A DNA stretch of 64,000 nt, taken from positions 3,348,001 through 3,412,000 of the forward strand of contig NC_134036.1 of assembly GCF_964204645.1 (NCBI RefSeq). The letters run 5' to 3'. Origin of the DNA: Tubulanus polymorphus. Taxonomy: Eukaryota > Animalia > Nemertea. The notes beneath the pieces are model-generated. The model was not told the DNA's origin. It saw nothing but the letters and a program-made list of their open reading frames with translations, and searched no databases. Each line of letters starts with the position of its first letter. The stretch's first letter is position 1. Below, in pieces: positions 22,867 to 51,322 of this stretch. The position numbers were made by a program, and so were the translations under genes.

Positions 22867-25226
22867 TCACGAAGATTTCGTTGGCGTTCCATTGGTTCCT
22901 GATTTTTTCGCCGCGCCATCAGTCGCTGTTTTCTCAGTTACATCATCGGATACGCTCGACTTAGCGGCGTCTCCGGAGCAGGACACTCCTCCGGTTGAAC
23001 CGAATCCTCCGGCTCCGCGCTCCGTTTCCGGCAACTTCGTCTGAAAAATTCAAATAAATATACTTTATCGTTGTTTTTTTAGAAATACCGATAAAGGAGA
23101 GAAGCTTCCATCGTGACGTCGAAGGAGATGAAGTGAGTAAGAGGATAATGTTTTGAAGACGATTTGAAGACCTAGAAACACGCCATCTGGTGGTGCACCT
23201 TGAAAACTAATTGTATAGTAGAGATATGAACAAGTCCGTAAATCGTGCCAGTGTTACACGGCGGCCACTTTCCACCAATTTACAATTCTCGACTTTTTCC
23301 AATCATACAATAGAAAATTCCCTTAGTGAACCAGAGAAATTTTAGGTTTAGAATGTTTCACTGTATTCTTTCCTATGAAGAAAGTGATTGAGAAACACAT
23401 GGTCAATAGCATTATCCGAATTCCTTCAGTTTTCCTGGTTCTTTTGCAAAATCTTTCAAATTCCTCCAGGTTTTCGGTAAAATTTCTCATTCTATGATTT
23501 TTTTCTAGATCTATCCGATCCCCCGAGTTTTCTAGGTCAGTGATCGCCCTGTTGGACAGCGTGCAGTTTTTCGAGTAGACCCAGGTCAGTGACCACTATA
23601 AGAATCATTCATTAATTACGAACGCATTAAATTTGAATTTTTCAACCCCCCCTCCCCCTCTGTACACAAAATCAGCCATTTTTTCGTATACATTAAGCAT
23701 TACAGTACGTAATTACACCCGAATGCGTACATAATAAATGAATGACCCCCTATTTGTTTGTTTAAAGCACACGTTACCTCTGACTCGACGATGTCCGGTA
23801 TATAGATACGTTCGAGTATCAGCTGCGCGACGCGATCGCCGCGTTTTATCGAGAACGACTTCGAGTTGTGGTTGAACAGAACGACGCCGACGTTGCCGCG
23901 ATAATCCTGATCTATCACACCGGCTGAAATATTTAGACAACGAATTCAATCGAGAGATTGGGAAAATTCTCATCAAATTCTGGGCGACCACTTTCAGCTC
24001 GTTTACAAATCCCCACCACCTTCAACTTGTAGGATCAGAGAAATTTCTAGAATTAAGAAATAAGAATAAGTTAGAGAATATTCCTGATATAGGGTGATTT
24101 TTCCATGTTTAAAATGCTACTTAAATTCATTCATTTTTCATTGAATCAACTATAAAGAAACACGTGGTTAATAGCATTATCTGAATTCCCCAAGTTCTGG
24201 TAAAAATTTGTCAAATTCCCTGAGTTTTTTCTAGATTTCTCAGATCCTCCAAGTTTTCCAGCCATCAGTGGCGCCCCCCGGGTATGCCTCAGCCACAAAA
24301 TATCTGGACCCGGGAATGAACGCTGCTCAGAGGACTATACTTAAACGCACCTCCGACGTCGATGTGGTGTTTCCAGGCGAGTCCCGATCTCGGAGCGACG
24401 CGACCGTAGCATCCGTCCGGTAACGCGATTTGAATATCGGTCATCGCGCAGACTTTCCCATTCGCTTCGATCGTGTAATCATGAGCGCTGAAAACGTAGT
24501 TAAAACACGCGATGACGTTAAGTCTTCATTTCGGGGGCGAAATCAAGATACGCGCGAAAGCGAGATTTCGGAGGAAAAACCTTCCGTTTATAAACGAACC
24601 TGCACAAATCCAAACCAGCAGCGAACTTGGAACCTCGAACTGGCGCCAGTGCGTGCTCCGACAGTTTATGGTATAACAGTTTGATCCGGTTTGGCGTCGT
24701 CACAGACTCTGAAACCAAAAACAACGCAATGAACAGGGATTAATTAGTTAAGATAACTAACAACGATCACAAAAAGTACAAAGCAAGGGCTTTGAAAATT
24801 TTTCACCGATCAGCTCTAGTACAGTGCAGCATTCGCCATTCACATACAAAACAAAAGGCGACAATTTTTCGCCAGCTGGTGCGGGTGTGGCGGTGGGGAT
24901 GAAAATTTGTTCAGACAAAATTCCCATTTTAAATGTACGAAACACATGCGCTTACCTTCCATTGCTACATCAGTTTGTTCTTGCACTTGTGAAGGCATGA
25001 TTTCAGCTCTTTTCGCCGGCTGTTCCTCTTCGTGATTCGATTTATCCAGTGATGAATTCATTGACATTGATAAATTTGATGCTTTTCGAATTTTCGCGCG
25101 CCCTGCTGGTTGGTGACTACGCGCCAAGGTCAGCGTGGAGCCGATACTCGGTGACTGAGATCGCGTAGTTATCCGAGACATCGCCGCTGTTAGAACCCGA
25201 ATCCCTCCCGTGATCCTGAATGTCAT
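22867..25226 (-). CDS. DUT: Deoxyuridine 5'-triphosphate nucleotidohydrolase (trimeric dUTPase)
   Basis: Exons 25226-24956, 24708-24600, 24487-24351, 23923-23778 and 23040-22867 are in phase. All five motifs are present: [49 protein letters not shown]. Confidence 0.97.
23390..23552. mobile_element. Copy of a dispersed CAGGGTGGCCAC-type short repeat/MITE (other copies ~24155-24280, ~28790-28915, ~35100-35288)
   Basis: Shared agaaacac-tggt-aatagcattat-cgaattcc...tttttctagat...cagtgg/atcgccctg between 23390-23552 and 24155-24280. Reverse-orientation relatives occur elsewhere. Confidence 0.55.
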
Positions 25227-25415: not shown

Positions 25416-28400
25416 ATGCCGTTTGTGATGATGTGCGGCTTTCCTTGCTCGGGAAAAACGACCAGAGCCGAACAGTTGAAGCGTTTTATCGAGGAGAACC
25501 GCAGCGGCGTCAGGGTTCATATTATTACTGAATCCGACCTAGGAAAAAACATTGTTTACATTGGTACGATACGGTCAATCTCAATTCAAATTATGATTTT
25601 ATTCGCCCACACTTATCAGACATAAACTAAGCTAATTTAATTCCATTATAAGCTAGCCAATTTCCATCCGGAGAAGTTTATTTATCAGCCAGTGTCCGGA
25701 CTATAAGCTGTCCAGTTCAATGTCTACTCTAGATTATAAGATGCTATAAGTACAGTTTGGACCAGACCCTGGCTTGCTTGAAAACCGTACAGTGTCCAGG
25801 CATCGATCCAAGCCTGTATCGAATGTCAAAATATGGCTAATATCCAACAAGGCCCAGTCCAATCTAGCCAGTGTCCAGTCAGAATTAACTAATGTCCTGT
25901 AATGCGACCAGCCAGCAGTGTCTCATTTAAACTACCTAATGTCCAGTTTAAGCTAGCCAATGTCCAGGTATCAATTCAAGCCAGTATCAAATATCGAAAC
26001 ATGGCTCATATCCAACTAGGCCCAGTCCAAGCTAGTCAGTGTCCCGTCAAAACTAGCTAATGCCTTGAAATGCTGCCAGCCAGCGTCGAGTTAAACTAGC
26101 TAATGTCCAGTCAAAGCTAGCCAATGTCCAGTCAGAATTAGCTAATGTCATGTTATGCCACCAGCCAGTGTCTCGTTTAAACTAGTGTCCAGTTCAGGCT
26201 AGCCAGTGTCCAGTCTGGCCAAATTAGCTAGTCCAATTTAAGCGGTTAATGTCCAAGCCAAATATTTTTGTAAAATATTGATATATCTATTTTCAGATTC
26301 GCTCAAAGAGAAGGAGACCAGGGCGACATTAAAATCAGAAGTTCAGAGGTGAGGCATGATTTATGTTTTTGATATGGCATGATCTATGTTTTTGATATAT
26401 CATTTAATGGCATTATTTGTGATAGGCCTTGCAGTCTGACTGGTTAAATAGTAATGAATGTTTATCTAAGACTAATTAAAATGATTTCATGTTGATTTCT
26501 TTAAATTTTCAGAAAAATCTCCAAAGAAGACGTCGTGATATTGGATTCATTGAATTATATAAAAGGTAGAAATCATTCGTTTCAGTTTGATAATGCCTGA
26601 AATCTGAGAAAGTACCAGTAATTATCTGTTGTATAATACGATTTCCAATTTTCTAGGATTCCGTTATGAACTTTTCTGCGTAACGAAATCAGCACAAACT
26701 CCTCAATGCGTGGTATGTATTTCACTAATAGTTGACCTGTGCCCGCCTGGTATCAGTTGTATACCATACTTGTAGTTATATATTATTCTGACGTAACTTG
26801 ATCAGCGGATTTAGTATTACCATATATGTAGATAAAGAGTATTCTGACGTAACAGGCACTTATCCTTAGATAAGGGCTTGTTATGCTTTCAGTCAAAGTC
26901 GAAAAGTCAATCAGAATTTTTTTGACTTGTTTTGAATTCAATGACAATGTGAACATCATCATCAGTAACTAATCATAATTTTACTGAATTGTTGAAGTTA
27001 CTGAGAATGAGATGGTCGTCATCAGTAACTACCATAATCATAATTTTACTGAATCGTTGAAGTTATTGACAATGCGATGGTCGTCATCAGTTACTTATCA
27101 TTATTTTACTGAATTGTTGAAGTTACTGAGAATTAGAAGATCGTCATCAGTAACTAATCATAATTTTACGGAATCGTTGAAGTTATTAAGAATGAGAAGG
27201 TCGTCATTAGTAACTAATCATAATTTTACTGAATCGTTGAAGTTATTGACAATTAGAAGATCGTCATCAGTAACTAAACATAATTTTACTGAATCCTTGT
27301 TTATGGTTGTTGATGTTTTAATCGTGTAGATATTCTGTGATATTAGCGAAGAATTATGCAAACAATGGAACAGCAGTCGTCCTGATGCTGACCAGTATTC
27401 ACATGATGTGTAAGTTTCTGCTGTTGACTAAAAAGAAAATCGTGTATATTAAATAAGGCTAAAAAAGAATACCTCGTTTCTCCTAATCAGCTGGGTCATT
27501 TTGTGAAACTGCAATAAAATTAGTAATCAGTTCATTTCCATATCTGCCGGGTCTGACAATGATAATGATTTAAGAATTGCAATATGATATGTACAGGGTT
27601 CATAGGGTCAACTCTTAAAAGCTCAAACAAGAAATGAGGTATCAATTTTTTTTAAAGTTAATATTCTATATATTCTATTGTTTTCTCTATATGTTAGTTT
27701 GAATGGATTGCTGATGAGATTCGAATGTCCCGATTCTCGGAATCGTTGGGATTCGCCGCTGTTCACGATACAAACCGACGACGAGCTGCCGTACGCGGAC
27801 ATCTGTAACGCCCTGTTTAATCAGAAAGCTCCGCCTCCAAATCAATCAACGCAATCGGTACGCCTTAACCCTTTCAGTGCTGACTAATTAATACCCTATA
27901 GTGCTGGAGAAAATTTGAAAATTCTAAAAAATTCCACCCTAGTGTGTTGAACAATGGGAATACCACTATAGTGCGTCTACACCGCAGTGCGGTGTATCGT
28001 TAGTTACTAGTATTTCACTATGTTTGACACTTGCTGCCATTTTTCAATAGAGATAATTACAAATTACTAATTCCATCAATACATCGCAGTGCGGTGTACT
28101 AGCAAAATCCATCACTGATTTATACACCGCACTGCGGTGTAGACGCACTGAAAGGGTTAAAGAAATTCATTATTGACCATTTTTTATGAAACTAGAGGGC
28201 CAGCCACCCCTATCATTTTTATATCCACCCGTCTGAGAAACAGCCATACCTTTTAAACTATCTGCTGCCCCTATCAGAAATAGAAAATTACACCAAAATT
28301 AAGGTTAAATTTTCTGTATTTTTGGGGGTTTGAAAAGGTGCAGCCCTGATGTCATACACTTAACACTCAATGCAGTCCCTTTAAGATTCCATCATATATG

Positions 28401-31400
28401 CATGGCTGGCTTCATAAATCCCCCTATGACATCATGGAAGTGGGCAACACATGTAACCTGAAAAAAAGGGTTGTTTAGATCGACTGACAGGATTGCTGTT
28501 CCAGAAAAGATGGCTGCCTCTGTTATCCTCCCTTTGACATTGTCAAATTTAGTGGGTCGGTCCATGCACTCCCAGCGAGAAGGGATAGTTGCAAAAAATA
28601 TCTAACTGTCTTTTGTTGTTTCAGCAACCGTTATCGTCATCGGATTTCCTTTACGAGTTGGATCGAATTACGAAAGAAATCATAAGCGTGAGTTCACTGT
28701 TTTATCTCTGCGCATCTGAATTCCACGGTTCAGGCTGCAATTTCACGAAAAAATTGACCACTTGGAAAATATTTTGAATTAACCTACACAGGATGGTGCT
28801 CCTGACCTAGGAAACCTGGAAAACTTAGGGAACCTGAAAAATCTAGAAAAAAATCGGGGAAAACTCGGGGAATTTGACAAATTTTACCAAAATCCTGGAA
28901 AACTGACCTCGTGTTTATTGATCAATGAATTCACACGATTCAATGAAAAATGAATGAATTGTAGCATTTTAGACCTAGAAATTTCTCCCGTTCACTCGAT
29001 GGAAATCGCATTGTGTAATCGCATGGAAATAAATATCTGGGAAAATTAAACTCGAGGGGATTTGTAAATTGGCGGAAAATGGCGCCAACCTGTTGTAAGT
29101 AACCATTGAGCCAGTTTATCTTAGATCGATTTAGGAGTTGAATCTTCTCGTGAAACTGGACAGTTTTGTTCATTTGTTCTGTGATCTTCGTGAATTGTGT
29201 TCACAATTTGTTCACATTTTTATCGTTTAGGAAATAATGTCTAGTCAAAAAACAGCCGTTCCCGGCGATGAGCTGAAGATTTCTGCAGCCAACGATTCAA
29301 TATCCTTTTTATATGATAATACCGGTATGTAGTCAGGTGAAGATCTAATTTTATACTAAAAAGGTTTGTTTAGAGACTGATTTATTCCAGTTTGGAAATT
29401 TTCCTACTATCTGGGAAATGTTCTATGCCTACTTACACAGTGACGGGTTTTGGGGGCGGTCTCGGGGTCGGGACACCTGCCTTCCCATTGATGTGACCCT
29501 TTTCAAGACAGAAATCGTTAAAAACCTGTAAATTTGAAACTCCTCCACTCGGAAATTGCAACCTTTCGGATTTATTTCCTCGAAAATATTCAAAACCAAG
29601 GGCGAAACTGTGGGGAACCGTAATAGAGGCCTCTGACTTGGCTGCTTCATGCGAGAAATGTCTTTTCTTTTCTTCTGGACCCGGCCCCTTCCAATTTTCC
29701 TCCATCCACCCCTGTTGCATACACGAAGGTTGTTTCTGTGCGTGATTTTTCATTTAGGTTTTCATAATAATAAAGACAAATTGAACGATAAAGAAAGAAC
29801 GATTAAGACAAGAGTATGTACAAAAATGTATTACTAGCCTATTTATAAATGCAAAATAATCGCTTGAAATGACTGAATTGAAAGCTTTATAAAAAGATTA
29901 TCAAGCAGTACGATTCACAGCTATAATCGATTGGATGATTGTGGTGGCATGCACGTAACAAGCCGACAGTTTAAGTAATTCAACTCAACGCAATATTTCT
30001 AAAACACTCCGAATAGTAAAAAAGATTCGACTAATGTTTCATTCTCTTGATTTCAATACTCATCAAGGACACGTTTAAACATGTTCAACATGTCCGTCGT
30101 GTTCGATAATACAATCAGATAAATGATACATGTATTCTTACATCCCTTCGCACTGCGAAGTAATAACTTAAGTTTTGCACAGGTATCTCATCGTTTAACT
30201 GGTTCCTAGCGCTGTCTGGCCTTACCGTTGACTTTCTTAAGGGGGCCAAGTCGGAAAGTCGTGGCTTAACTAATTCTAAACGTTCGTTGTCATATGTCGT
30301 AAGACTGGTCTAAACAAAATCTAAGACTTTACTGCACAACGGCCCGCAGTTTTCGAGTATGGATAGTACAACCTTGGAGAAATCATTTGACGAATGGTTA
30401 CTTCAAGGTACACAGCCCAGCCAGCCGCTGTTATCATGAAGATAAGTAAGGACTATAGGGCTAAACCCATTTAACCCACCCATCCAAAGCAAAAACAATT
30501 GACTTAAAGTTTTAGAATGACTCACGCATAGATATACATGATCACAAGCTAAAAGTGTGACTCAGACTACCAAAAAATATGAAATGGATTTTCCCTGATT
30601 AAAGAGGTTAAAGCTTAACTTTTACGGGGCCAGATTTCGCCTGGTGAGTTTATAGTTAAGTATATATATATATATATATCTATGAAGTAGAATTCTCTGA
30701 AAGCTGACTAATTTACATAGACTTATGCATTATTGCATTGTTTCTTTTTCTCACTGTAGAATAAGAACTATCGATATGTAACACCACCGACCGAAAAGCT
30801 GCGCGCTTCATCTCTTTTCGATCCCGACTCCACACTGAAATCCAACTGTCATTATCAGATCTAAAGTTCGAAATTTACCGCTGTTGTTGCTGCTGCTACC
30901 GGCTGCTCGATTCGTTCAAGTATTTCCGTCACTCGAATTTTGATTATCCATTAATTCAATCTCTTCAGAAGCATTTTGTCTGTGCGATTGTTCTTCTTGA
31001 TGATCTTTATGTCTGGCAGAAGTCGGTGACCGCGGCTTATTGCGACGATAGAGACAAACAGCCAACAACCCGAATAATACTGCCACGCACACCACTCCTA
31101 CTACCACTCCTACAATTTGACCGGGGTCGAGCGGATTTGATACCTGCTTTCCACTCTCGACTGTAGACCTTGTGCTGTTTAATACTGTTTGATTCAAGCG
31201 TTCTGTAGTCGCATCTTTACCTGGAAAAATTCAGTTTAGAAATGGTTAAATTCCTGAACCTAATTTTCTAAATCTTAGTCTATACCCAGTTCAACTGATG
31301 GGTTTAATTCAACTATGGACCTAGTTCCACAGTTGTTTGGGTCTCATTCGAATACGGATCCAGTCCACAGTTCCACAGTTTTTTTGTGGTTTAATTCTAG

Positions 31401-34400
31401 TGTGGATACAGTTGTGTGAGATAAATTTGTCTCTGGTCCCAGTTGCACGGTTGTTAGGATTTAATTTAAGTCTGGATCCAGTTTCACAATTTTGTGGGAT
31501 AAATTCGTCTCTAGATCCAGTTCCACAATTTTGTATTATATTTATTTTCTGAATAATTTACATCAATGTATAAAGGATATATTAATTTAGACTTGCATTT
31601 AACAGAAGTTATATAATTAATTTGTTTTATATATTACATATAAGCTCAAGCCATTGTTACATAAAGGACATAAAGAGTTCAATAATCAACGTTCAAACTT
31701 CAAGAAGCCCTTATCGCGGGGAAGTCCCTTTTTTATGGCGTCATCATGACGCATATATGACGAACAAACAATACCTCTTTTTTCATAGACTACGATGTCG
31801 TGGCAAACTTTTCTTAAGTCGTTAATCGAACAACAGATTGTCATGTTTCTGGTGACCGTGAACTGTACATGCTCGAGCGGTTGGTTCGTCGGTGTTTTGC
31901 TGATGTTGTTGCACTTTTTCCCGATCTTACCCTCGTACGGCGACTCGCGGAATTCGGGGCTCGTCGTGCATTCGTTCGACAACATGACGTCTTCTTCCCC
32001 GCGGCTCCGAGATTCGAATCTCAGAGTGCGCAGGAGCGGGTCATCTACGTGGTGTATCCACTGACATGTGGCATCCATCCTGGTGTTGTTAGCTACAGGA
32101 CTCGATGGCGTCACGGTCAATTCGAGTAAATCTGAAAGTATAGCAACGATCATCGAAGAAACTATTGACATTGATAAGACCGTTATTGTAGTTATTAATC
32201 ATTAAAGACGTTGCTAACAGCAATGATGACTCAGGATCATTTTAAAACACGTCAGCAAAAAAAATACATGCACCATCTTATCAGAATCTTGTGCTGGAGT
32301 TTCATAAGAATTCACCCGAGACATTTTTTGATAGAACTAAACATGAACTACCGCCAGTAATTAGATATTTCACCAACACGCGCCTTCGGACGGTGGACAA
32401 CGATGTGCGAGTAGGATTTCCAGACTGACGATACCTGTATAAAGTGAATGGTTCGAGTAGAATTTGATTTTTAGAACACTTACCCACTTCGATCTTCCGG
32501 AATTCTCTCGGATAATTTTTATATGTGCAAACGTATGTACCAGCATCGGCGAAAGTGAAATTATCATTCGTTACATTGACGACCGCATGATCACCGTCCT
32601 GCATCTGATTCGAACTCCATTTGTTGAATTTAAGGACATCGCGTCCATTTGCGATGTATTCATCGTCGGTGCCATTTTTTTTGCATAATCGCGTTTGGTA
32701 ATCTCTATCGTCGTCAGCCGGTCCACACGCTATCGTCACCGGACCCCCGCTCGCCGGTAGCCTCAACGAAGACGGCGTGACTGACATGTTTATCTTAGGA
32801 GATCGCACCACACCTGTTGAAGAGATGATGGTATTACGACATGCTCATGTCAATGATGAGGGAAACCTGGAGAAGGGAGCGATCGACGTCTCGTAGAATC
32901 TTTGGCATTGGTTTGCCGAAAACCGTTCTAATACGAATCCAAATTGTGAAGCATTATTGAAACCAGAGTAGTGATTTCGTTTGGAATCTACGATGTCTGG
33001 TGTACTAGAACTCATCATCGGATGCCTTAATTGAAAATACCGCTACCGACCGGCACGCATTAGATATTCTATTAGCACACTTTTAAAAAGCAGTACTTCG
33101 CCAGAGACGTCGATAGCTGTTTTAGTCAACAGCCGAACGCCGTGGTTTCATTTTGATAAATTCTGTCGCATTAAATTCGAATTGTGGGACTTCCTCATTT
33201 ATTCATTCTACGTATTACCATTCATCTCAATTTCTGATCGTCCATTCGATGCTTCTCTGGAAGGCAGTGGTTCGAAGCCTGTGACATGATGTAATGCCGG
33301 GCATGGAAAATCTCACGGATCTCTTTCGTTTTCTTGCAATAAAACAATGTCTATTCTGACTTACCTTTCAAACTTCTGGCGTTCACCGCTCGTGGTGTAC
33401 AGGTCGAGACGATGAGACAAGTCGCCATCAAAGCGAAAATAAGCCGGATCATTTCTACTATAACATCAGGAGAAACTATGTTGCCTTCTGTTTCAGTTAA
33501 AGCCCTTTTCATCATCGACCAGCTCGGTAACCTGCATCGACGGAAGTGAATCATTTACAGTCTGCGATACAAATTTTAATCGTTTGGTGGCGTCTCGTAC
33601 GCTACGTTAGTGGGTAATGGGTAATTTATGCAAATTTATCCACGAAAATCGCGCACCGTCGCCATACCCGGATCAGTACGCGTGTTCGTTTCTGAATAAC
33701 TTATGCAAATTTACGATCCGAAAGGCAACATGGCCGCCCACTCGACTTCATGTTAACGTTTTATAATCCATCGCGATAAACCTATTATCCAAGTTACATG
33801 TACTATTAATTGTACTGAATGGAGTATTTGAATCGACCAATGAGTCCTAACAGACTTACAATTAGAAGTGGGTTCGATTTTGTTTGCAAGAATGGGGAAA
33901 ATCCCGTGACGTCATGGCTATATTTAGATAGCGTACGTAATCATATGCACACGGAAGTTACATATTTACATGGAGTCTAACTGTGTGACACAAATTCGAT
34001 TGACGACGAGTAAAATCTGTTGGCGAATTTCCAAGATAATATAATGTGAAAATATGTATTTGATTTTTATAACTGTTCGGTGGCGGATATTGAGGCAACT
34101 GATGAAACACCGGCGGCCGTAGATGTTAATTAGACCATTCCCTAATCCCATATGACGTCACCATCAAACTACCGACTGTGAAATCGCTAGTAGTTTCAGG
34201 CGCAAATTTTGCAAATTCTTTTTTACCCTTATTTAAATGAAAGTTTCGTACCTTACCTTTTAAAAGCGTCTAAAGCCCGCGATACCAATTTTCAGAAAGT
34301 GAAAGTTTGTTCCAGACGCCGTCGAATAATCACATTTATCGTTTATCCGTTTAACACGCGAAATACTGAAATTGATACGATTCGCTTTCTTTTACGCGAA

Positions 34401-36440
34401 ATCCTGTTAAAATCGACACAATTAGCCCTCTGTTTGTCGCAGAAACGTTGGTTCGATCTATGTTTGACTGAAGACTGAAGGCGTAATGAATTGAATACGC
34501 TCCTGTCGTCGCTTTTATCTTGCACGGGTCAACGATGGCGTTTGGGTTTCCCTGATAAACTAAATTAGGATCTTATCGTCATACTAGGTGCTTACGTCAT
34601 GCTTAAGAGTATACTTGAAATTCCGGACCCATCACTTTGACTCAGTTTTACATGTACGGTCACATTTAGTCGCGAAATGAAATCTAACTTTTACATCAAC
34701 CCTTTATCCTCGATTTGTCGTCACGTCGCAATTCACATTTTGATTTTTTTTTACGTGCACGTTCGATTCATATTGTCCCGTTTCTATCCGTATAGTAATC
34801 TGTAGTATATGATCATTTATTATGCATAAGTCTATTTCCATTAAGTCGATTAAACATATCCAGGACTCACGCACGTAAGCGAGTTGTTTATATTTCATAT
34901 GCGTAGAGAGAGTAATAGGCCTATATTTAATCTGTGTTGTTATGTAGTGTTTTTCCGACCGGTTATGTGCGACCAAATTGACTGATACTGCGTCACAGCT
35001 GTGTCAGAAAAAGGGCCTTCTGTAGTACATTAAATACATAATTGAACGGTTAAAGTCGCTGTCTAGAAATGGCTGAGATAAAAATCCTGAACTCTACAAT
35101 TCGTGGCCACTTGCCTCGAAATCAGGAAAAGTTGGGGAATAGTCAAGGAATTTTGTTTAAAAAAAGAGAGCTAAAAATCATGGAAAGATTAGGGAAATTA
35201 GTTGAGATTTCTAATTCGCGCACAAAATCCAACAGTTTCCATCTCTGACTGTGCAGATCAAGAGTCAAATAATAGTAGCCACCCTGATCTAGATGAACGC
35301 TTTTAGGAAAGTGTGTTGTTGGAATGCTGATATATCTGGTTTTTTGAATTTAAAGTATCTCAGGTGAAGTTCTGAACACATGTGAATTGCGCAGATAAAA
35401 TGTCTAATGTCTGGTGTTTGTAGTTGAAATGTCTTTTGTCTGGTGTTTGTAGTTCAGGTGATGTTACGAAAATACACGCGAAGCCTTGGTGATCAAATAT
35501 TCAAAAAAAAAGTCTCAAATGTTTTAAGTCTTTGGGCTGGTTCCTCAGTTGAGACTTAAGTCCAAAAATGATCTTAAATTTTAAGACCGGTGTTTAGTTA
35601 TTAGATTGGTTTATAGAACTAAAATGGTCTTAAATTGGTCTTAAGTCTAAGCCATGACTATGGAACTGGGCTGTGGGTTGATTGTCGCATTACTGTGGAC
35701 AAAAACACCATACGGTGCGTGCAAGTGTAGTATTTTTTTTGTGAAAGGAATATACCGGTAGTGAATATATCTGTCGCATATGTGTCACCGAAAATTTGTA
35801 GCAAGTTTCATATGGTCTCAACTATGTTTGTCACCAATATTGACCTAATTAGGGAACCTGGTGATTGTTTACCTCTCTCTAAAAATATACCATCATAGAT
35901 CAGGGCAGTGTAATAAGTTACACATTACACTTCCTGCATAGATATAGAAATGAAAAGTTATTAGGGATGAAAATGGCTTTAGAGGAGTTGATCCAGGCTG
36001 AATAAAGGGGTTCACATATGAAAAGGCACTTTTCAGTAGTTAAAAAGAATAAAAGTTTGAAAATTGAGGTAGATTTTTATGCAGTTTTAGCGCATATTAG
36101 TGCTTTAACCCTACTGTGGACTTTAGTCATAAATCAAGTAAAGAGTAGCTCTTTAAATATAAATGTTAATACCAATTCTTGGTATGTAGGTTTTCGTTGT
36201 GAGATTTTCTCGCTTCGGAGAATTTTCTTTCTCGATTCTGTTTAATTCTAGGAAATATCCGAAACGTTTATGGCGTGTTTTTTTCCTTTACTGTCGTACT
36301 TCAGTTTTCAGCGAGTCATCACTTTGGCCGAACTGCAGAGATCCCGCCGTCAGTTCATCACCTACACGAAAGTGCACACGGTCGACGTTCCCAAAATAGC
36401 GAACTTGTTCGTTCAGTATCTCAACAACAGCGTCAAATAA
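25416..36440 (+). CDS. KTI12: Protein KTI12 homolog (Elongator-associated P-loop ATPase), 9 exons, last intron U12-type AT-AC
   Basis: Exons 25416-25563, 26297-26348, 26513-26565, 26657-26712, 27330-27409, 27698-27857, 28625-28687, 29231-29299, 36300-36440. Protein contains MPFVMMCGFPCSGKTTRA, VILDSLNYIKGFRYELFC, MRFECPDSRNRWDSPLF, PPPNQSTQSQPLSSSDFLYELDRIT and TLAELQRSRRQFITYTKVH...IANLFVQYLN. Confidence 0.96.
25640..26260. repeat. Degenerate ~22-bp minisatellite (agctagccaatgtccagt) in KTI12 intron 1
   Basis: Many recurrences of ctagccaatgtccag / ctagctaatgtcc. Confidence 0.75.
26958..27296. repeat. ~60-bp tandem repeat (~5.5 copies) in KTI12 intron 4
   Basis: tcatcagtaactaatcataattttactgaatcgttgaagttattgagaatgagaagg is repeated. 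About 1.5 copies also occur at 55425-55510. Confidence 0.9.
27865..28160. mobile_element. piggyBac-type MITE with TTAA target-site duplication
   Basis: TTAA|ccctttcagtgc ... gcactgaaaggg|TTAA. Relatives at ~12170-12330 (inverted), ~14850-14925 and ~19860-20015. Confidence 0.85.
30916..33452 (-). CDS. Two-Ig-domain type-I membrane protein (Ig gene A), nested antisense in the KTI12 U12 intron
   Basis: Phase-1 exons: 33452-33365 (signal MIRLIFALMATCLIVSTC), 32813-32484 (Ig1: VTIAC...FTFADAGTYVC), 32131-31775 (Ig2: DATC...MTICCSINDLRKVC), 31220-30916 (stalk, TM IVGVVVGVVCVAVLFGLLAVCLY, RRNK tail). Confidence 0.88.
31290..31535. repeat. ~30-bp minisatellite (tctggatccagttccacagttg)
   Basis: ggatccagtt(c/t)caca units are repeated. 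Confidence 0.7.
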
Positions 36441-38118: not shown

Positions 38119-39752
38119 TTAAAAAGCCAAAAATGCCATTGATATAATCGCAATCGTAATGGTGATGATGGAATAAACATCGGTTTCTGTACCACTGAAT
38201 GTGTATGCAGGTTCCTTACTGGTTGTTGAGATCATTGTATGAGTTTCTGAAAAAAGACAAGGAAACATGACTATAGAGATATCCAAAGTTTTCCAAGACA
38301 AATCTTCCATTGTCAAATTATATTTTATATTACTGTCTGAAAATTCTAATAACTGAAGGCTAATTTCAACGACCGGATCGTCTGAATTCGGGAAATAGAG
38401 AACTTCCACTGGTAAAAGGATTAGATTATATTACGGTACCTTCATTTGGCACAATGGCTGTAATTGTGCTGCATTGCTTGTTTCCTTCACCGAACTGACA
38501 GCAAACTTCCATCGAATCGGACGCTTCGATTTTCATGCGAATGGCCCGTCTGCCCGATTCGTTCGGACACCCGGTGACGTTGATGTTAAAACCTGAATCG
38601 GAATCTTTGCGGCAGCCGCTTACAATCATTTTTCCATTCACTGCGATGATGATGTCTGATTTTATGACGTTTGCTTCCTTCGCGTAGATCGTTGAGCACT
38701 CGACTACCACTGGATCTCCTACCTGGCTTATTGGAAGAATTCGGAGATCAACCACATCTGTGGGGAAAGATTTAATGATGTTTTTAAGGTTAAACGGGCA
38801 ATTGTCTTCTTCGGGAAAATGGGGTGGGCAATTGTATTCTTCAGGAAAATGGGGTGGGGGAGCTTTGTCTCTAAACTTAAGCTAAAGGATGCCACTTGGA
38901 ACGTTGTACATACCGATGCTGATAGAAATACTGGCACATGCTTGTCCACGACAGCATGTGTAGACACCTGCATCTCCTAACATCATGGCGTTCTTAGTGA
39001 CATCTATGCACCCCTCTTTTGAATCCGATCGTCGCCAACCTTGTTCAACTTGCCTCTCGGATGCGATCAAGGTGTTACTGGGTTCGTGCAGCAGCAGAAG
39101 GCTTGCTACCTGGTGATTCGGTACACCTAGGTAATCGCAACGTATTCGGAATGATGCGCCGTGACGAATCGGGGATTCCGGATATGCAGATATTGTCATT
39201 TTTCCTGGAATGGAACACTATGCTTGACTAGTACATGGGCGTCCCAAGGATTTTTTTTTTTTGGAGGGTTCGTTTTTAGGAATAGAGGTGTCTGGGTGTC
39301 CTCCCCAGAACATATTTTGTCTGAAAATTCAAAAAGGGGGTTCGTTCGAACTGCCGAACCCCCCCCCCCATCCTAGGGACACCCATGTAGTACCTAGAAA
39401 TAATGCTGATGAACAATTTTGCTACAATACAGCACCAGAATACAGTATCACCTCTTCCTCGTGAACCTAACTGACAAGTCTGGCATCAGAACGCATCCCA
39501 GTCTTCGACTGAGAAAATCTCGTTAAATAGGATTTTTACCTCTTGCATCTAGAGGACATTATGCTAAGCAGGTTGGCGCTGGTAATCCCCTAAAAGATAA
39601 TGTTAGAAATGATTCTGCTATAGTATGAAATGAATCTTAAAACACTTACCTGAGTAATTTTCGCTCTTATTATTCGACACTGAGCTTTCGGACGAATTCA
39701 GAATTACGAGAAAAATCACAATGATAGCTTGGATTCTTCGAGAAATAGCCAT
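38119..39752 (-). CDS. Two-Ig-domain protein, probably GPI-anchored (Ig gene B)
   Basis: Phase-1 exons: 39752-39650 (signal MAISRRIQAIIVIFLVILNSS), 39204-38914 (PIRHGASFRIRC...DAGVYTCCRGQAC), 38757-38440 (DPVVVECS...IVSGC...DSMEVCCQFGEGNKQC), 38246-38119 (ends VYSIITITIAIISMAFLAF*). Confidence 0.87.
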
Positions 39753-40869
39753 TTTGCTAGTAGAATGCCGGCTCGAACAGCGCCACCTGTCATGAATGAA
39801 ATTATCTGCGTATATTATTCTATTGAATTGTGTAGGACACAAAAAATTAATCTAGAATTAAAGAATTCAATTAAAATCTTATTCTGTCGTTTTATTTATG
39901 GATTGAATATCGTATTTAAGTTTATAAACGATTTTTTGATCCCTTAAACACACTAGTATAGAGCTGATATAAAATGGCGGACACTTCCTGTTTTGATATA
40001 TCACGATTTCCATCGGTTTCGATCGAATCCCATATTTCTCTTTACTCCAAAAAGTTCGAATCTTGCTTTCCAGTGATATCAAAATGTTGGAATCCGCGTC
40101 GGGGCTTGCTTAAAATTGACTATATTGATGATATCTTATTTGCAGCAGTCTCTTGGATGTCAACGTCAAAAAACCTTTGACACCAACTTCGAACTATGCA
40201 AAAAATACCACGTATAGTATGCTAGAAAATAATGCCATTGTAGTCACCATTCACTCGTTCATTTAAATGCAGCTTATCCTTTATGAGAACTTGGAACGTC
40301 GTTTTGCCTAAGTGCTTTTAGTTTCGAAATGTCCTCATTTGGTTTTTCTAGCCTGATCTATATATGTCTGATCGTCGAAATCGTTAAAAATTAGATTACC
40401 GTCACGAGTTCCAAATATCTGGAAACTTTCCAAAATTCCCGCGCTATCTTCACTCAAGCATACGCCTTCTATCATTTCATTTTTCGATTTTTTCTTATAA
40501 ATCCTTTCATTATTCATTATGGCACCTCTCTGTCGCTGTTGGTGTTTACTTCCATGTTTCATGATGTTTCTAGCTTGATCCGAATCGATGTGTTTGAGTG
40601 CGTTTATTATGAACCTTCATACGTATTGTCCAATGCAATATCTAATACATATTTATGCCTAATATATATGCTGATTGCCAATAATATAAATTAAAAATAT
40701 GGAGCACTACTTTCGGTCAATATCAGCGTCATCTATATTTTGCTTCGAAAGTCTCTGTTGTTATCAAATAGGTATCGTACTCCATCTATGGCCAAAAGAT
40801 TGCGTGACATGGGGACATTCGACAAATCCAATTGAGTAACGATTATTTAGAATCGTTTCGCTTTACGAG

Positions 40870-42020: not shown

Positions 42021-43700
42021 TCATCGGCAAATAGCTAGAACTGTATTTGATATGATCATAATGATAATCGTGACGATAAGGTAGACGCCGATCGCTGTGC
42101 CATTGTCGGTGTATTTGTATTCAGCCTCCTTGTTTGAGATCTGTTTCTTCTGAGTATCTGAACAGAAAGAAAAGGAAACATGGCAAAGTGAATATACATG
42201 GATAGAATTTATTTCCCAATTGAAGAGAACTGAAAACTTCCCTTCATTAATATGATTGGTAACGTACCGTATGGATTATCCATGCTATTTGTTGGAGTTG
42301 CAACTCTAATGTTGCGGCATTGTTTCGTAGCATCACCGAGCTGACAGCAAACTTCCATAGAATCAAACACCTTCTTGATTCGAAAGTGAATTCCTTTCTT
42401 TCTAGTAGGGCGATTCCAACACTTGTCAATCTGGACGCTGTTCTCAAACTGAGGAGCAATGCTGCAGCCGCTTACTATTATTTGGTGGTTCGATGTGGTG
42501 ACGATCATTTCAGATTGTTTCAATTTGTTGGTCTCGCGATCTGTGTTGTTGAAGTCGTAGACAGAAGAGCATTCTACAATGACCGGATTTCCTTGGTTCA
42601 CCTGGGATTCTGGATGGATTCGGATTTCTACGACATCTTTGGGGAAAAATAAAATGAAATGTGATTTTATATAATTAAGTAGTGATTGTATATAACTAAA
42701 AGACCATTCTTCTTCTCAATGTCGATTCAGTGACAAAATGATTAGTATCTGATGTCGACCTTCTCATTCTTAATGATTTCAAAGATTCAACGAAATTATG
42801 ATCAGTTATTGTCGAAGATCTTCTTTTATTCTCAATAGATTCAACAATTCGTTGAATTTATGATTAGTAATTGGCGACTTTCTCATTTCAAAATAATTCT
42901 AATGGCCTCTATGTCATGTCTCCAAAACTATAAGCTGAAACTGATCACTCTACGCACCAATGCCAACGACGATACTGTCGCATTCTGTCTGATAGCAGCA
43001 TTTGTATTTGCCCGCATCTCGTGATGTCATTACGTTCTTTTGTACATCGACAGCAACCACTGACTGAGTAAACGATTTCTCCTCGGATTGCGTTCGCAGC
43101 CAGCACGTGCTGGGGTCTGATTTACCACCCGACGCTAAAAAGATTGATTCTCGTTCCGTTTCGCGCGTCAGAATTAAGTCGTTCATCGCCGGGTAATGGG
43201 ATATTCCAGGGTGTTGGCATTGTATCCTTAATGATGTCCCATGGCGAATCGGTGGTGAAGGGTCCGTCTTTATCGTAACTCCTCCTGGAATAATGAAGAA
43301 TTGGTTTATTCAGGAATACAAGTCCGTACCCCATAGCAATATCAAAATGGTGCCTATCCTGAAGCCGGCATTGTTGGTACATTCTTAAAACGATACTGGT
43401 AAGATGGGATCTCTGCTTCCAGAATCTCATGTTTTTTACCCTTTGGTAGGGTAATCTTGGAACAGCCCTTGGTAAAAATTGGACATGATGAAATTCCTCA
43501 TCACAAAAGATTGCAAGAAAATATGTTGGGGGAAAGGAAACATTTGGTTGAATCTTGTCTTTGTCTTTGCAGTACATTTTCCTACCTGTATGATCGGGAT
43601 TATGTTTCACTCCACTACAGGACTCTGCGATTCCAGGCTTCAAGCATGCCAAGAATAGAGCGTATGGTATAAAGGACCATAGTAACGCTGTAGTCTTCAT
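42021..43700 (-). CDS. Two-Ig-domain protein, probably GPI-anchored (Ig gene C, paralog of B)
   Basis: Phase-1 exons: 43700-43586 (signal MKTTALLWSFIPYALFLACL), 43284-42958 (PIRHGTSLRIQC...DAGKYKCCYQTEC), 42636-42268 (NPVIVECS...IVSGC...DSMEVCCQLGDATKQC), 42157-42021 (ends NGTAIGVYLIVTIIIMIISNTVLAICR*). Confidence 0.87.

Positions 43701-44594: not shown

Positions 44595-51322
<6,728 letters not shown>

What the first reader, a model, noticed from the sequence alone, without database searches (positions are those of the whole stretch)
29300..36299. 7-kb U12-type AT-AC intron in KTI12 hosts an entire antisense Ig-receptor gene
Seen in sequence: KTI12 exon 8 ends ...AAC GAT TCA|ATATCCTTT, the U12 5' consensus. 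The conserved KTI12 C-terminus resumes 7 kb later after TTCCTTTACTGTCGTAC|, exactly in frame. All other KTI12 introns are GT-AG and under 800 bp. The whole of Ig gene A and its promoter lie inside this intron on the opposite strand. Established: minor introns are rare and often rate-limiting, and GT-AG-only gene finders mis-annotate them. Inference: transcription of the nested gene could modulate splicing of an Elongator/tRNA-modification cofactor, or the Ig cluster expanded into this intron.
Basis: partly seen in the sequence, partly recalled or inferred. Interest (0 to 1): 0.8.

Follow-up and report, generated by a model that had tools for sequence, protein, structure and literature searches.

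The report
Old minor-type intron holding a nested gene
The last intron of this ribbon worm's KTI12 gene really is a rare "minor-spliceosome" AT-AC intron, inherited from early animals and here swollen to 7 kb by a small membrane-protein gene on the opposite strand; this is a sound but ordinary case, and the public gene model already uses the junction.

Summary
Confirmed. KTI12 (+ strand, 9 exons, 25416-36440) has seven GT-AG introns of 91-767 bp. Its eighth intron, 29300-36299, starts ATATCCTTT and ends TTCCTTTAC-N8-AC, in phase 0. All nine exons match the public protein "KTI12 homolog [Tubulanus polymorphus]" residue for residue (273/273), junction 29299|36300 included. So the window is that palaeonemertean, not human, and the AT-AC junction is already annotated.

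The genome carries U11, U12, U4atac and U6atac. The same intron position and phase is AT-AC in acorn worm, sea urchin and salmon. It is U12-type GT-AG in abalone, U2-type in Lingula, Owenia and a chiton, and absent in Lineus. It is therefore an ancestral bilaterian minor intron with the usual fates. Orthologous introns are 141-1539 bp, and in none did the collection call a second gene within the KTI12 range.

Here the intron holds a coherent 4-exon minus-strand gene (CDS 33452-30916, 359 aa): signal peptide, two Ig-like domains, membrane anchor, all introns phase 1. The Ig call is weak in Pfam but supported by sequence motifs and language-model features. Whether nested-gene transcription affects KTI12 splicing is untested speculation.

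The scan also noted other AT-AC introns in this genome (ADAM10, Urb2). Low novelty.

The parts
25416..25563 (+). KTI12 exon 1 (ATG, P-loop GFPCSGKT)
   Evidence: Pfam PF08433 positions 1-41, 40.6 bits; identical to P0270 residues 1-49
26297..26348 (+). KTI12 exon 2 (52 nt)
   Evidence: same length as in orthologues
26513..26565 (+). KTI12 exon 3 (53 nt)
26657..26712 (+). KTI12 exon 4 (56 nt)
27330..27409 (+). KTI12 exon 5 (80 nt)
27698..27857 (+). KTI12 exon 6 (160 nt, DSRNRWDSPLF motif)
28625..28687 (+). KTI12 exon 7 (63 nt)
29231..29299 (+). KTI12 exon 8 (69 nt, phase 0 at both ends)
   Evidence: identical to P0270 residues 205-227; aligns without gaps to orthologues
29300..36299 (+). KTI12 intron 8: U12-type AT-AC intron, 7000 bp
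29300..29308 (+). U12-type 5' splice site ATATCCTTT
   Evidence: complementary to the AAAAGGGC near the 5' end of this genome's U11
36283..36291 (+). U12 branch-point box TTCCTTTAC (branch A at 36290, 9 nt before the terminal AC at 36298-36299)
   Evidence: complementary to GUAAGGAAA of this genome's U12 snRNA apart from one U.U mismatch
36300..36440 (+). KTI12 exon 9 (last exon, stop at 36438-36440; AATAAA overlaps the stop)
   Evidence: Pfam PF08433 positions 234-271, 38.4 bits; P0270 residues 228-273
33365..33452 (-). Nested gene A exon 1: start codon and signal peptide
32484..32813 (-). Nested gene A exon 2: Ig-like domain 1 (VTIAC ... DAGTYVC)
   Evidence: Pfam Ig_3 19.7 bits and ig 18.1 bits, both below cut-off; language-model features nearest V-set/I-set clusters, 0.93-0.95
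31775..32131 (-). Nested gene A exon 3: second beta-rich domain with a CC motif
30916..31220 (-). Nested gene A exon 4: membrane anchor, short tail, stop codon
35534..35671 (.). About 140-bp dispersed repeat, the only repeated DNA found in the 3' part of the intron (33600-36250)
   Evidence: at least 50 genomic copies at 88-94% identity

Best explanation
Intron 8 of the KTI12 gene of the palaeonemertean Tubulanus polymorphus is a genuine minor-spliceosome (U12-dependent) AT-AC intron. The U11/U12 di-snRNP would recognise ATATCCTTT at 29300 and TTCCTTTAC at 36283-36291. U4atac/U6atac.U5 would then catalyse joining of 29299 to 36300. The intron is ancestral to bilaterians. In this lineage it has grown to 7.0 kb because it now contains an independent, oppositely oriented 4-exon gene for a 359-aa type I membrane protein with two Ig-like domains. 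This is an ordinary host-gene/nested-gene pair. Shown here: the sequence signals, reading frame, identity to the public protein model, snRNA genes, orthologous introns, and the nested gene's coding structure. Inferred: actual use of the minor spliceosome, expression of the nested gene, and that its promoter and untranslated regions stay inside the intron.
For: The junction signals and frame are. All nine exons are identical to NCBI 'protein KTI12 homolog [Tubulanus polymorphus]' (P0270, 273/273 residues), including ...AANDS|FSFQRV.... Exons 2-8 have the same lengths (52, 53, 56, 80, 160, 63, 69 nt) and phases as in five other phyla. The same site is AT-AC with a U12 branch box in Ptychodera flava (1539 bp), S. 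purpuratus (141 bp) and Oncorhynchus tshawytscha (646 bp). In Haliotis rufescens it is GTATCCTT...AG (815 bp). The exons tile without gaps on orthologues in alignment A1. U12 scores 111.8 bits, U6atac 96.5, U11 98.1 and U4atac 73, all above Rfam cut-offs, with conserved recognition sequences. For the nested gene: three GT-AG phase-1 introns and a 1080-nt CDS, plus Ig-like signals.
Against: No RNA reads were examined; the public protein is a model, and I could not see the evidence behind it. The branch box has one mismatch to TTCCTTAAC, and the branch A lies 9 nt from the 3' end, at the short end of the 9-15 nt seen in the orthologues. One in-frame GT-AG alternative exists: donor after 29324 (GTATGT) with acceptor CGAG before 36316, adding 3 aa. 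The nested gene's Ig call is below Pfam cut-offs, and the single-sequence fold was unusable (pLDDT 42.6). No relative of its first domain turned up elsewhere in the genome at E <= 0.01; only one candidate was scored.
Confidence: 0.9

Rival explanations
1. The mature mRNA uses a major-type GT-AG splice instead (donor GTATGT after 29324, acceptor AG before 36316), and the ATATCCTTT is coincidental or only a minor isoform.
For: This pair is in frame and stop-free, and it keeps the conserved C-terminus. GTATGT is a decent U2-type donor. Cryptic U2-type sites near U12-type sites are known to be used when minor splicing is weak (general knowledge).
Against: It inserts 3 residues into a stretch whose length is the same in all the orthologues aligned. 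The acceptor has G at -3 and lies 4 nt after a much better TTTTCAG, which would put the message out of frame. The public model uses AT-AC, and orthologues have AT-AC at exactly this codon boundary.
Confidence: 0.04
2. Gene A is not a working nested gene. It could be a decaying duplicate of the neighbouring two-domain genes, or its transcription unit could start beyond exon 9, in which case it would overlap KTI12 rather than nest inside it.
For: There is no expression evidence. The Pfam Ig hits are below cut-off. Similarity to neighbour B is only marginal. The only canonical poly(A) signals on its strand lie 1340 and 1530 nt past the stop, 80-280 nt from KTI12 exon 8.
Against: All four exons are open. 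The three introns are GT-AG and all phase 1, as is typical of Ig-superfamily genes. Signal peptide, the Cys...DxGxYxC pattern and the membrane anchor are intact. Language-model features place domain 1 among V-set/I-set clusters.
Confidence: 0.2
3. The nested arrangement is regulatory: convergent transcription of gene A through the region next to the U12 5' splice site slows or blocks minor splicing or elongation of KTI12.
For: Only geometry supports it. The genes are on opposite strands, and gene A's likely 3' end lies near the AT-AC donor. Minor introns are often slowly spliced (general knowledge).
Against: No data here bear on it. Antisense nested genes in long introns are common, and most show no demonstrated coupling (general knowledge). 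The nest is absent from every orthologue examined, so KTI12 function does not depend on it.
Confidence: 0.1

Closest known systems
Orthologous KTI12 intron 8 in Strongylocentrotus purpuratus, Ptychodera flava and Oncorhynchus tshawytscha (NCBI gene models)
   Same: Same codon boundary and phase (141 nt before the stop; 138 nt here, where the last exon is one codon shorter). ATATCCTTT donor, TCCTT-type branch box 11-15 nt from a terminal AC, and identical lengths of exons 2-8.
   Different: Those introns are 141-1539 bp, and the collection called no second gene within those KTI12 ranges. Here the intron is 7000 bp with a nested antisense gene, and the branch box reads TTTAC instead of TTAAC.
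U12-type intron evolution as described by Burge, Padgett and Sharp 1998 and later surveys (cited from my own knowledge): subtype switching, conversion to U2-type, and loss
   Same: The KTI12 site shows all three fates. It is AT-AC in Tubulanus and the deuterostomes, GT-AG U12-type in Haliotis, U2-type in Lingula, Owenia and Liolophura, and lost in Lineus.
   Different: Nothing differs in kind; this is one more worked example.
Nested (intronic, opposite-strand) protein-coding genes of animals
   Same: A complete coding unit sits inside a long intron of a host gene on the other strand. It was gained in one lineage, which is the usual direction of change (general knowledge).
   Different: The host intron is of the minor class. 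I found no paper dealing specifically with this combination, but nothing suggests it behaves differently.

Membership tests
U12-type (minor) intron, AT-AC subtype | 5' splice site /ATATCCTT | tested here: met
   ATATCCTTT at 29300-29308, directly after the last codon of exon 8
U12-type (minor) intron, AT-AC subtype | Branch-point box TTCCTTRAY close to the 3' end, which terminates in AC | tested here: met
   TTCCTTTAC at 36283-36291 (one mismatch), branch A 9 nt from the 3' end, terminal AC at 36298-36299; orthologues show 10-15 nt
U12-type (minor) intron, AT-AC subtype | The junction restores the reading frame and the conserved protein | tested here: met
   Phase 0; exons 8 and 9 equal residues 205-227 and 228-273 of P0270; tiling on orthologues is gapless
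U12-type (minor) intron, AT-AC subtype | The genome encodes the minor spliceosome snRNAs | tested here: met
   U12, U6atac, U11 and U4atac all score above Rfam gathering scores
U12-type (minor) intron, AT-AC subtype | The orthologous position holds a U12-type intron in other taxa | tested here: met
   AT-AC in three deuterostomes and GTATCCTT-AG in Haliotis
U12-type (minor) intron, AT-AC subtype | Spliced junction seen in RNA, and dependence on U12/U6atac | not testable with these tools
   Only indirect: the public NCBI protein model uses the junction
KTI12 (PF08433) | Match to the family profile above cut-off, N-terminal P-loop, conserved C-terminal tail | tested here: met
   Exon-wise hits of 61.5, 40.6 and 38.4 bits against a 22-bit cut-off; GFPCSGKT motif; 57-62% identity to animal orthologues
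Nested intronic gene | Whole coding sequence inside one intron of the host gene | tested here: met
   CDS 33452-30916 on the minus strand, inside 29300-36299
Nested intronic gene | Transcript start and end inside the intron; gene expressed | not testable with these tools
   Canonical poly(A) signals at 29571 and 29381 lie inside the intron; there are no RNA data
Immunoglobulin superfamily | Ig-domain profile match above threshold, or an Ig fold | tested here: inconclusive
   Ig_3 19.7 bits (cut-off 30) and ig 18.1 bits (cut-off 21.8). AlphaFold2 single-sequence pLDDT was 42.6. ESM feature hits of 0.93-0.95 went to V-set/I-set clusters, with 175-185 shared features. The Cys...DAGTYVC pattern and phase-1 introns are present.

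The most novel reading that the evidence does not exclude
The lineage-specific insertion of an antisense membrane-protein gene into an ancient, slowly spliced minor intron has made KTI12 (and so Elongator-dependent tRNA wobble modification) output depend on the activity of the nested gene, through convergent transcription next to the AT-AC donor.
Probability: 0.08. Interest if true: 0.45.

Novelty: new member of a known kind. Interest (0 to 1): 0.2.

Why it matters
It matters little beyond good annotation. It documents that KTI12 carries an ancestral bilaterian minor intron at a fixed site. That site shows every textbook fate of such introns across phyla: kept as AT-AC, switched to GT-AG, converted to major type, or lost. 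One ribbon worm kept the AT-AC form while the intron grew about 5- to 50-fold around a newly nested gene. This could serve as a marker site for studies of minor-intron evolution and as a test case for gene finders, because several public models of other species read through the AT-AC donor. The regulatory idea would be of moderate interest only if RNA data showed coupling.

Tried and rejected
(1) GT-AG and other alternatives. I enumerated all GT/GC-AG and AT-AC pairs around both ends. The only plausible in-frame pair (29324/36316) has a poor acceptor and breaks the conserved spacing.

(2) Literature. 'KTI12' with 'U12-type' or 'minor intron' gave 0 papers. 'U12-type intron' with 'nested gene' gave only general papers.

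(3) Rfam scan of 24000-45000 found no RNA family in or near the intron.

(4) AlphaFold2 on Ig-like domain 1 without an alignment gave pLDDT 42.6, so no fold search was made.

(5) Alignment A2 (Lineus plus the exon rows only) was misaligned and discarded; A3 was used instead.

(6) The look-up of encoding contigs found nothing for P0018, P0205 or P0270. I therefore could not see how the public record annotates the nested gene.

(7) Paralogue search for gene A. tblastn within the window and a six-frame search of the genome found only gene A itself.

(8) The second ATATCCTTT (31572-31580, minus strand) lies inside gene A's third intron. It is not at an exon boundary and comes after a stop codon, so it is a chance match.

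(9) The full-length spliced protein of gene A could not be searched, because exon-sized queries cannot reach a 359-aa protein under the length rule.
Full report
WHAT IS THERE

The window is G000:C12:3348001-3412000. On the + strand a KTI12 gene runs from the ATG at 25416 to the stop at 36438-36440. Pfam PF08433 matches it exon by exon at 61.5, 40.6 and 38.4 bits against a 22-bit cut-off.

Reading the boundaries directly gives nine exons:
- 25416-25563
- 26297-26348
- 26513-26565
- 26657-26712
- 27330-27409
- 27698-27857
- 28625-28687
- 29231-29299
- 36300-36440

Introns 1-7 are GT-AG and measure 733, 164, 91, 617, 288, 767 and 543 bp. Intron 8 (29300-36299, exactly 7000 bp) begins ATATCCTTT and ends TTCCTTTAC TGTCGTAC. 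It lies between two complete codons (phase 0).

The 9-mer by itself is not remarkable: there are 2 matches in the window against 1.05 expected. Its meaning comes from sitting exactly on an exon boundary.

IDENTITY OF THE GENOME AND OF THE MODEL

Earlier notes of this scan called the animal a ribbon worm. A word search with an alignment whose rows were the nine exons given one by one by reference, plus three orthologues (A3), returned P0270. This is NCBI's 'protein KTI12 homolog [Tubulanus polymorphus]', 273 aa.

Checked exon by exon, with split codons checked separately, all nine exons are identical to P0270. Exon 8 equals residues 205-227 and exon 9 equals residues 228-273. The window therefore comes from Tubulanus polymorphus (Palaeonemertea) or something indistinguishable from it. 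It is not human. The public annotation already joins 29299 to 36300. I could not retrieve that record to see its supporting evidence.

MINOR-SPLICEOSOME FEATURES

The genome has one strong copy each of U12 (111.8 bits), U11 (98.1) and U4atac (73), and two strong copies plus one weak copy of U6atac (96.5, 93.5 and 40.5 bits). All are above Rfam gathering scores, and none appears in the prokaryote controls.

The U12 snRNA keeps GAGTAAGGAAAAT. This pairs with the intron's UUUCCUU, and with the C that follows the branch A, leaving a single U.U mismatch where the consensus has A. U11 has AAAAGGGC three bases from the start of its Rfam match, complementary to CCUUUU of the donor. U6atac keeps AAGGAGAG. 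The branch A (36290) is 9 nt from the 3' end.

COMPARATIVE EVIDENCE

An HMMER search with exon 6 and a word search with the abalone protein gave orthologues. I fetched eight of their genes and mapped the annotated proteins back onto the DNA exactly.

Seven of them have eight introns at the same positions and phases, with exons 2-8 of identical length to the window's. Lineus has six introns, at six of those same sites.

State of intron 8 in each species:
- Ptychodera flava: AT-AC with ATATCCTTT and a TCCTT branch box, 1539 bp.
- Strongylocentrotus purpuratus: AT-AC of the same kind, 141 bp.
- Oncorhynchus tshawytscha: AT-AC of the same kind, 646 bp.
- Haliotis rufescens: GTATCCTT...AG with a U12 branch box, 815 bp.
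- Lingula anatina: plain U2-type GT-AG, 360 bp.
- Owenia fusiformis: plain U2-type GT-AG, 685 bp.
- Liolophura sinensis: plain U2-type GT-AG, 1322 bp.
- Lineus longissimus: absent; exons 8 and 9 are fused, and intron 4 is also gone.

This is the classical pattern for an ancestral U12 intron: retention, subtype switch, conversion and loss. It makes a chance origin of the Tubulanus signals untenable.

Several public models of other species read '...K-ISF' or '...K-ISL' at this point (P0209 amphioxus; fragments P0007, P0010, P0018, P0051). That is the translation of ATATCCTT, so these look like read-through of the same donor.

ALTERNATIVES AT THE JUNCTION

One search listed every in-frame, stop-free pair of GT/GC-AG or AT-AC sites near the two ends.

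One GT-AG pair is in frame: the donor after 29324 with the acceptor before 36316. It uses a GAG acceptor 4 nt behind a much better CAG. It also adds three residues where every orthologue aligned has the same length. I rate it at about 4% as the main product; it could be a cryptic product.

THE NESTED GENE

On the minus strand inside the intron lie four open exons:
- 33452-33365: start codon and signal peptide.
- 32813-32484: first domain.
- 32131-31775: second domain.
- 31220-30916: hydrophobic anchor, basic stop-transfer residues and a short tail.

All three introns are GT-AG and phase 1. The CDS is 1080 nt, encoding 359 aa.

Domain 1 has the Cys...DxGxYxC pattern. Its Pfam Ig matches are sub-threshold: Ig_3 19.7 bits and ig 18.1 bits. 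Protein-language-model features put it among V-set/I-set clusters, with scores of 0.93-0.95 and 175-185 shared features. A single-sequence AlphaFold2 model was too poor to use. 'Ig-like' is thus probable, not proven.

Two neighbours downstream of KTI12 lie on the same strand: B at 38119-39842 and C at 42209-43700. They share the four-part layout and are clear paralogues of each other (37% identity, E 2e-18). A resembles B only marginally (E 0.03 and 2e-4). KTI12's last exon therefore sits between A and B.

Canonical poly(A) signals for A lie at 29571 and 29381, still inside the intron but within 80-280 nt of exon 8.

THE REST OF THE INTRON

The part searched, 33600-36250, is unique DNA apart from a ~140-bp dispersed repeat at 35534-35671. 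There are also two short tandem arrays inside gene A's third intron and no Rfam family. The 5' stretch 29300-30900 was not searched for repeats. The growth of the intron is thus mainly the nested gene and its surroundings, not a pile-up of transposons.

HOW IT MOST LIKELY WORKS

Shown here are the signals, the frame, the public model, the machinery, the orthology and the coding structure of the nested gene.

Inferred is the mechanism. U11/U12 binds the donor and branch box as a unit, U4atac/U6atac.U5 completes the reaction, and exon 8 is joined to exon 9 across 7 kb. Gene A is transcribed independently from its own promoter within the intron.

I put it near 10%.

COMPARISON AND NOVELTY

This is a member of two well-known kinds: U12-type AT-AC introns, and nested antisense genes in introns. 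The junction is already in the public annotation. I found no paper naming KTI12 together with minor introns, so the cross-phylum history of this site may be undescribed. It is nonetheless unsurprising.

The scan has also noted AT-AC introns in ADAM10 and Urb2 of this genome, which I did not test.

PROCEDURE NOTES

The spliced model of the window was never sent to any search or fold tool as a joined sequence. Exons were given one by one by reference. The joined search step was left out, and the public protein P0270 made it unnecessary. Two scripts touched the join. One search combined exon 8 variants with exon 9 in memory, only to test frames, and printed those short junction peptides. One search compared each exon separately.

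Noticed in passing
window 24289-24724 (-); L015 1113-7754; L016 8137-9796; L017 1-1907: A dUTPase gene lies head-to-head immediately upstream of KTI12 in Tubulanus, Haliotis, Lineus and Lingula. This is a conserved divergent gene pair across three lophotrochozoan phyla.
   Followed up: partly
window 33626-33638 and 33701-33713 (-): Two exact copies of TAAATTTGCATAA, which contains the octamer-like ATTTGCAT, lie 174-261 nt upstream of nested gene A's start codon. Chance expectation is 0.26, and 2 of 100 shuffles reach two copies. This may be a promoter element.
   Followed up: partly
window 35534-35671: A short dispersed repeat of about 140 bp has at least 50 copies across all large contigs at 88-94% identity, often in adjacent or inverted pairs. 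It looks like a SINE or MITE.
   Followed up: no
window 26959-27299 and 25793-26215: A 60-bp tandem repeat (5.6 copies) in KTI12 intron 4 creates a spurious 105-aa ORF. Nested 168/85/21-bp tandem repeats lie in intron 1.
   Followed up: no
P0209 (Branchiostoma floridae C3YDP1); P0007, P0010, P0018, P0051: These public protein models of other species continue '...K-ISF/ISL...' at the intron-8 site. That is the translation of ATATCCTT, so they look like read-through of an AT-AC donor by a gene finder. I did not check their DNA.
   Followed up: partly
L016 10001-12467 (Lineus longissimus): The heteronemertean KTI12 has lost introns 4 and 8, and the whole gene is 2.5 kb. Within Nemertea the minor intron is therefore kept in one class and lost in another.
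   Followed up: yes
window 31572-31580 (-): A second ATATCCTTT lies inside gene A's third intron. It is not at an exon boundary and looks like a chance match.
   Followed up: yes
window 44595-46883 (-): A 762-aa open frame contains a run of about 60 aspartates and serine-rich low-complexity sequence. It lies downstream of the three two-domain genes and was not identified.
   Followed up: no
G000:C1:26931462-26931695 and G000:C2:3921843-3922426: Weak KTI12-profile matches to the N-terminal kinase-like part only occur elsewhere in the genome. They are probably PSTK or another P-loop kinase rather than a second KTI12.
   Followed up: no
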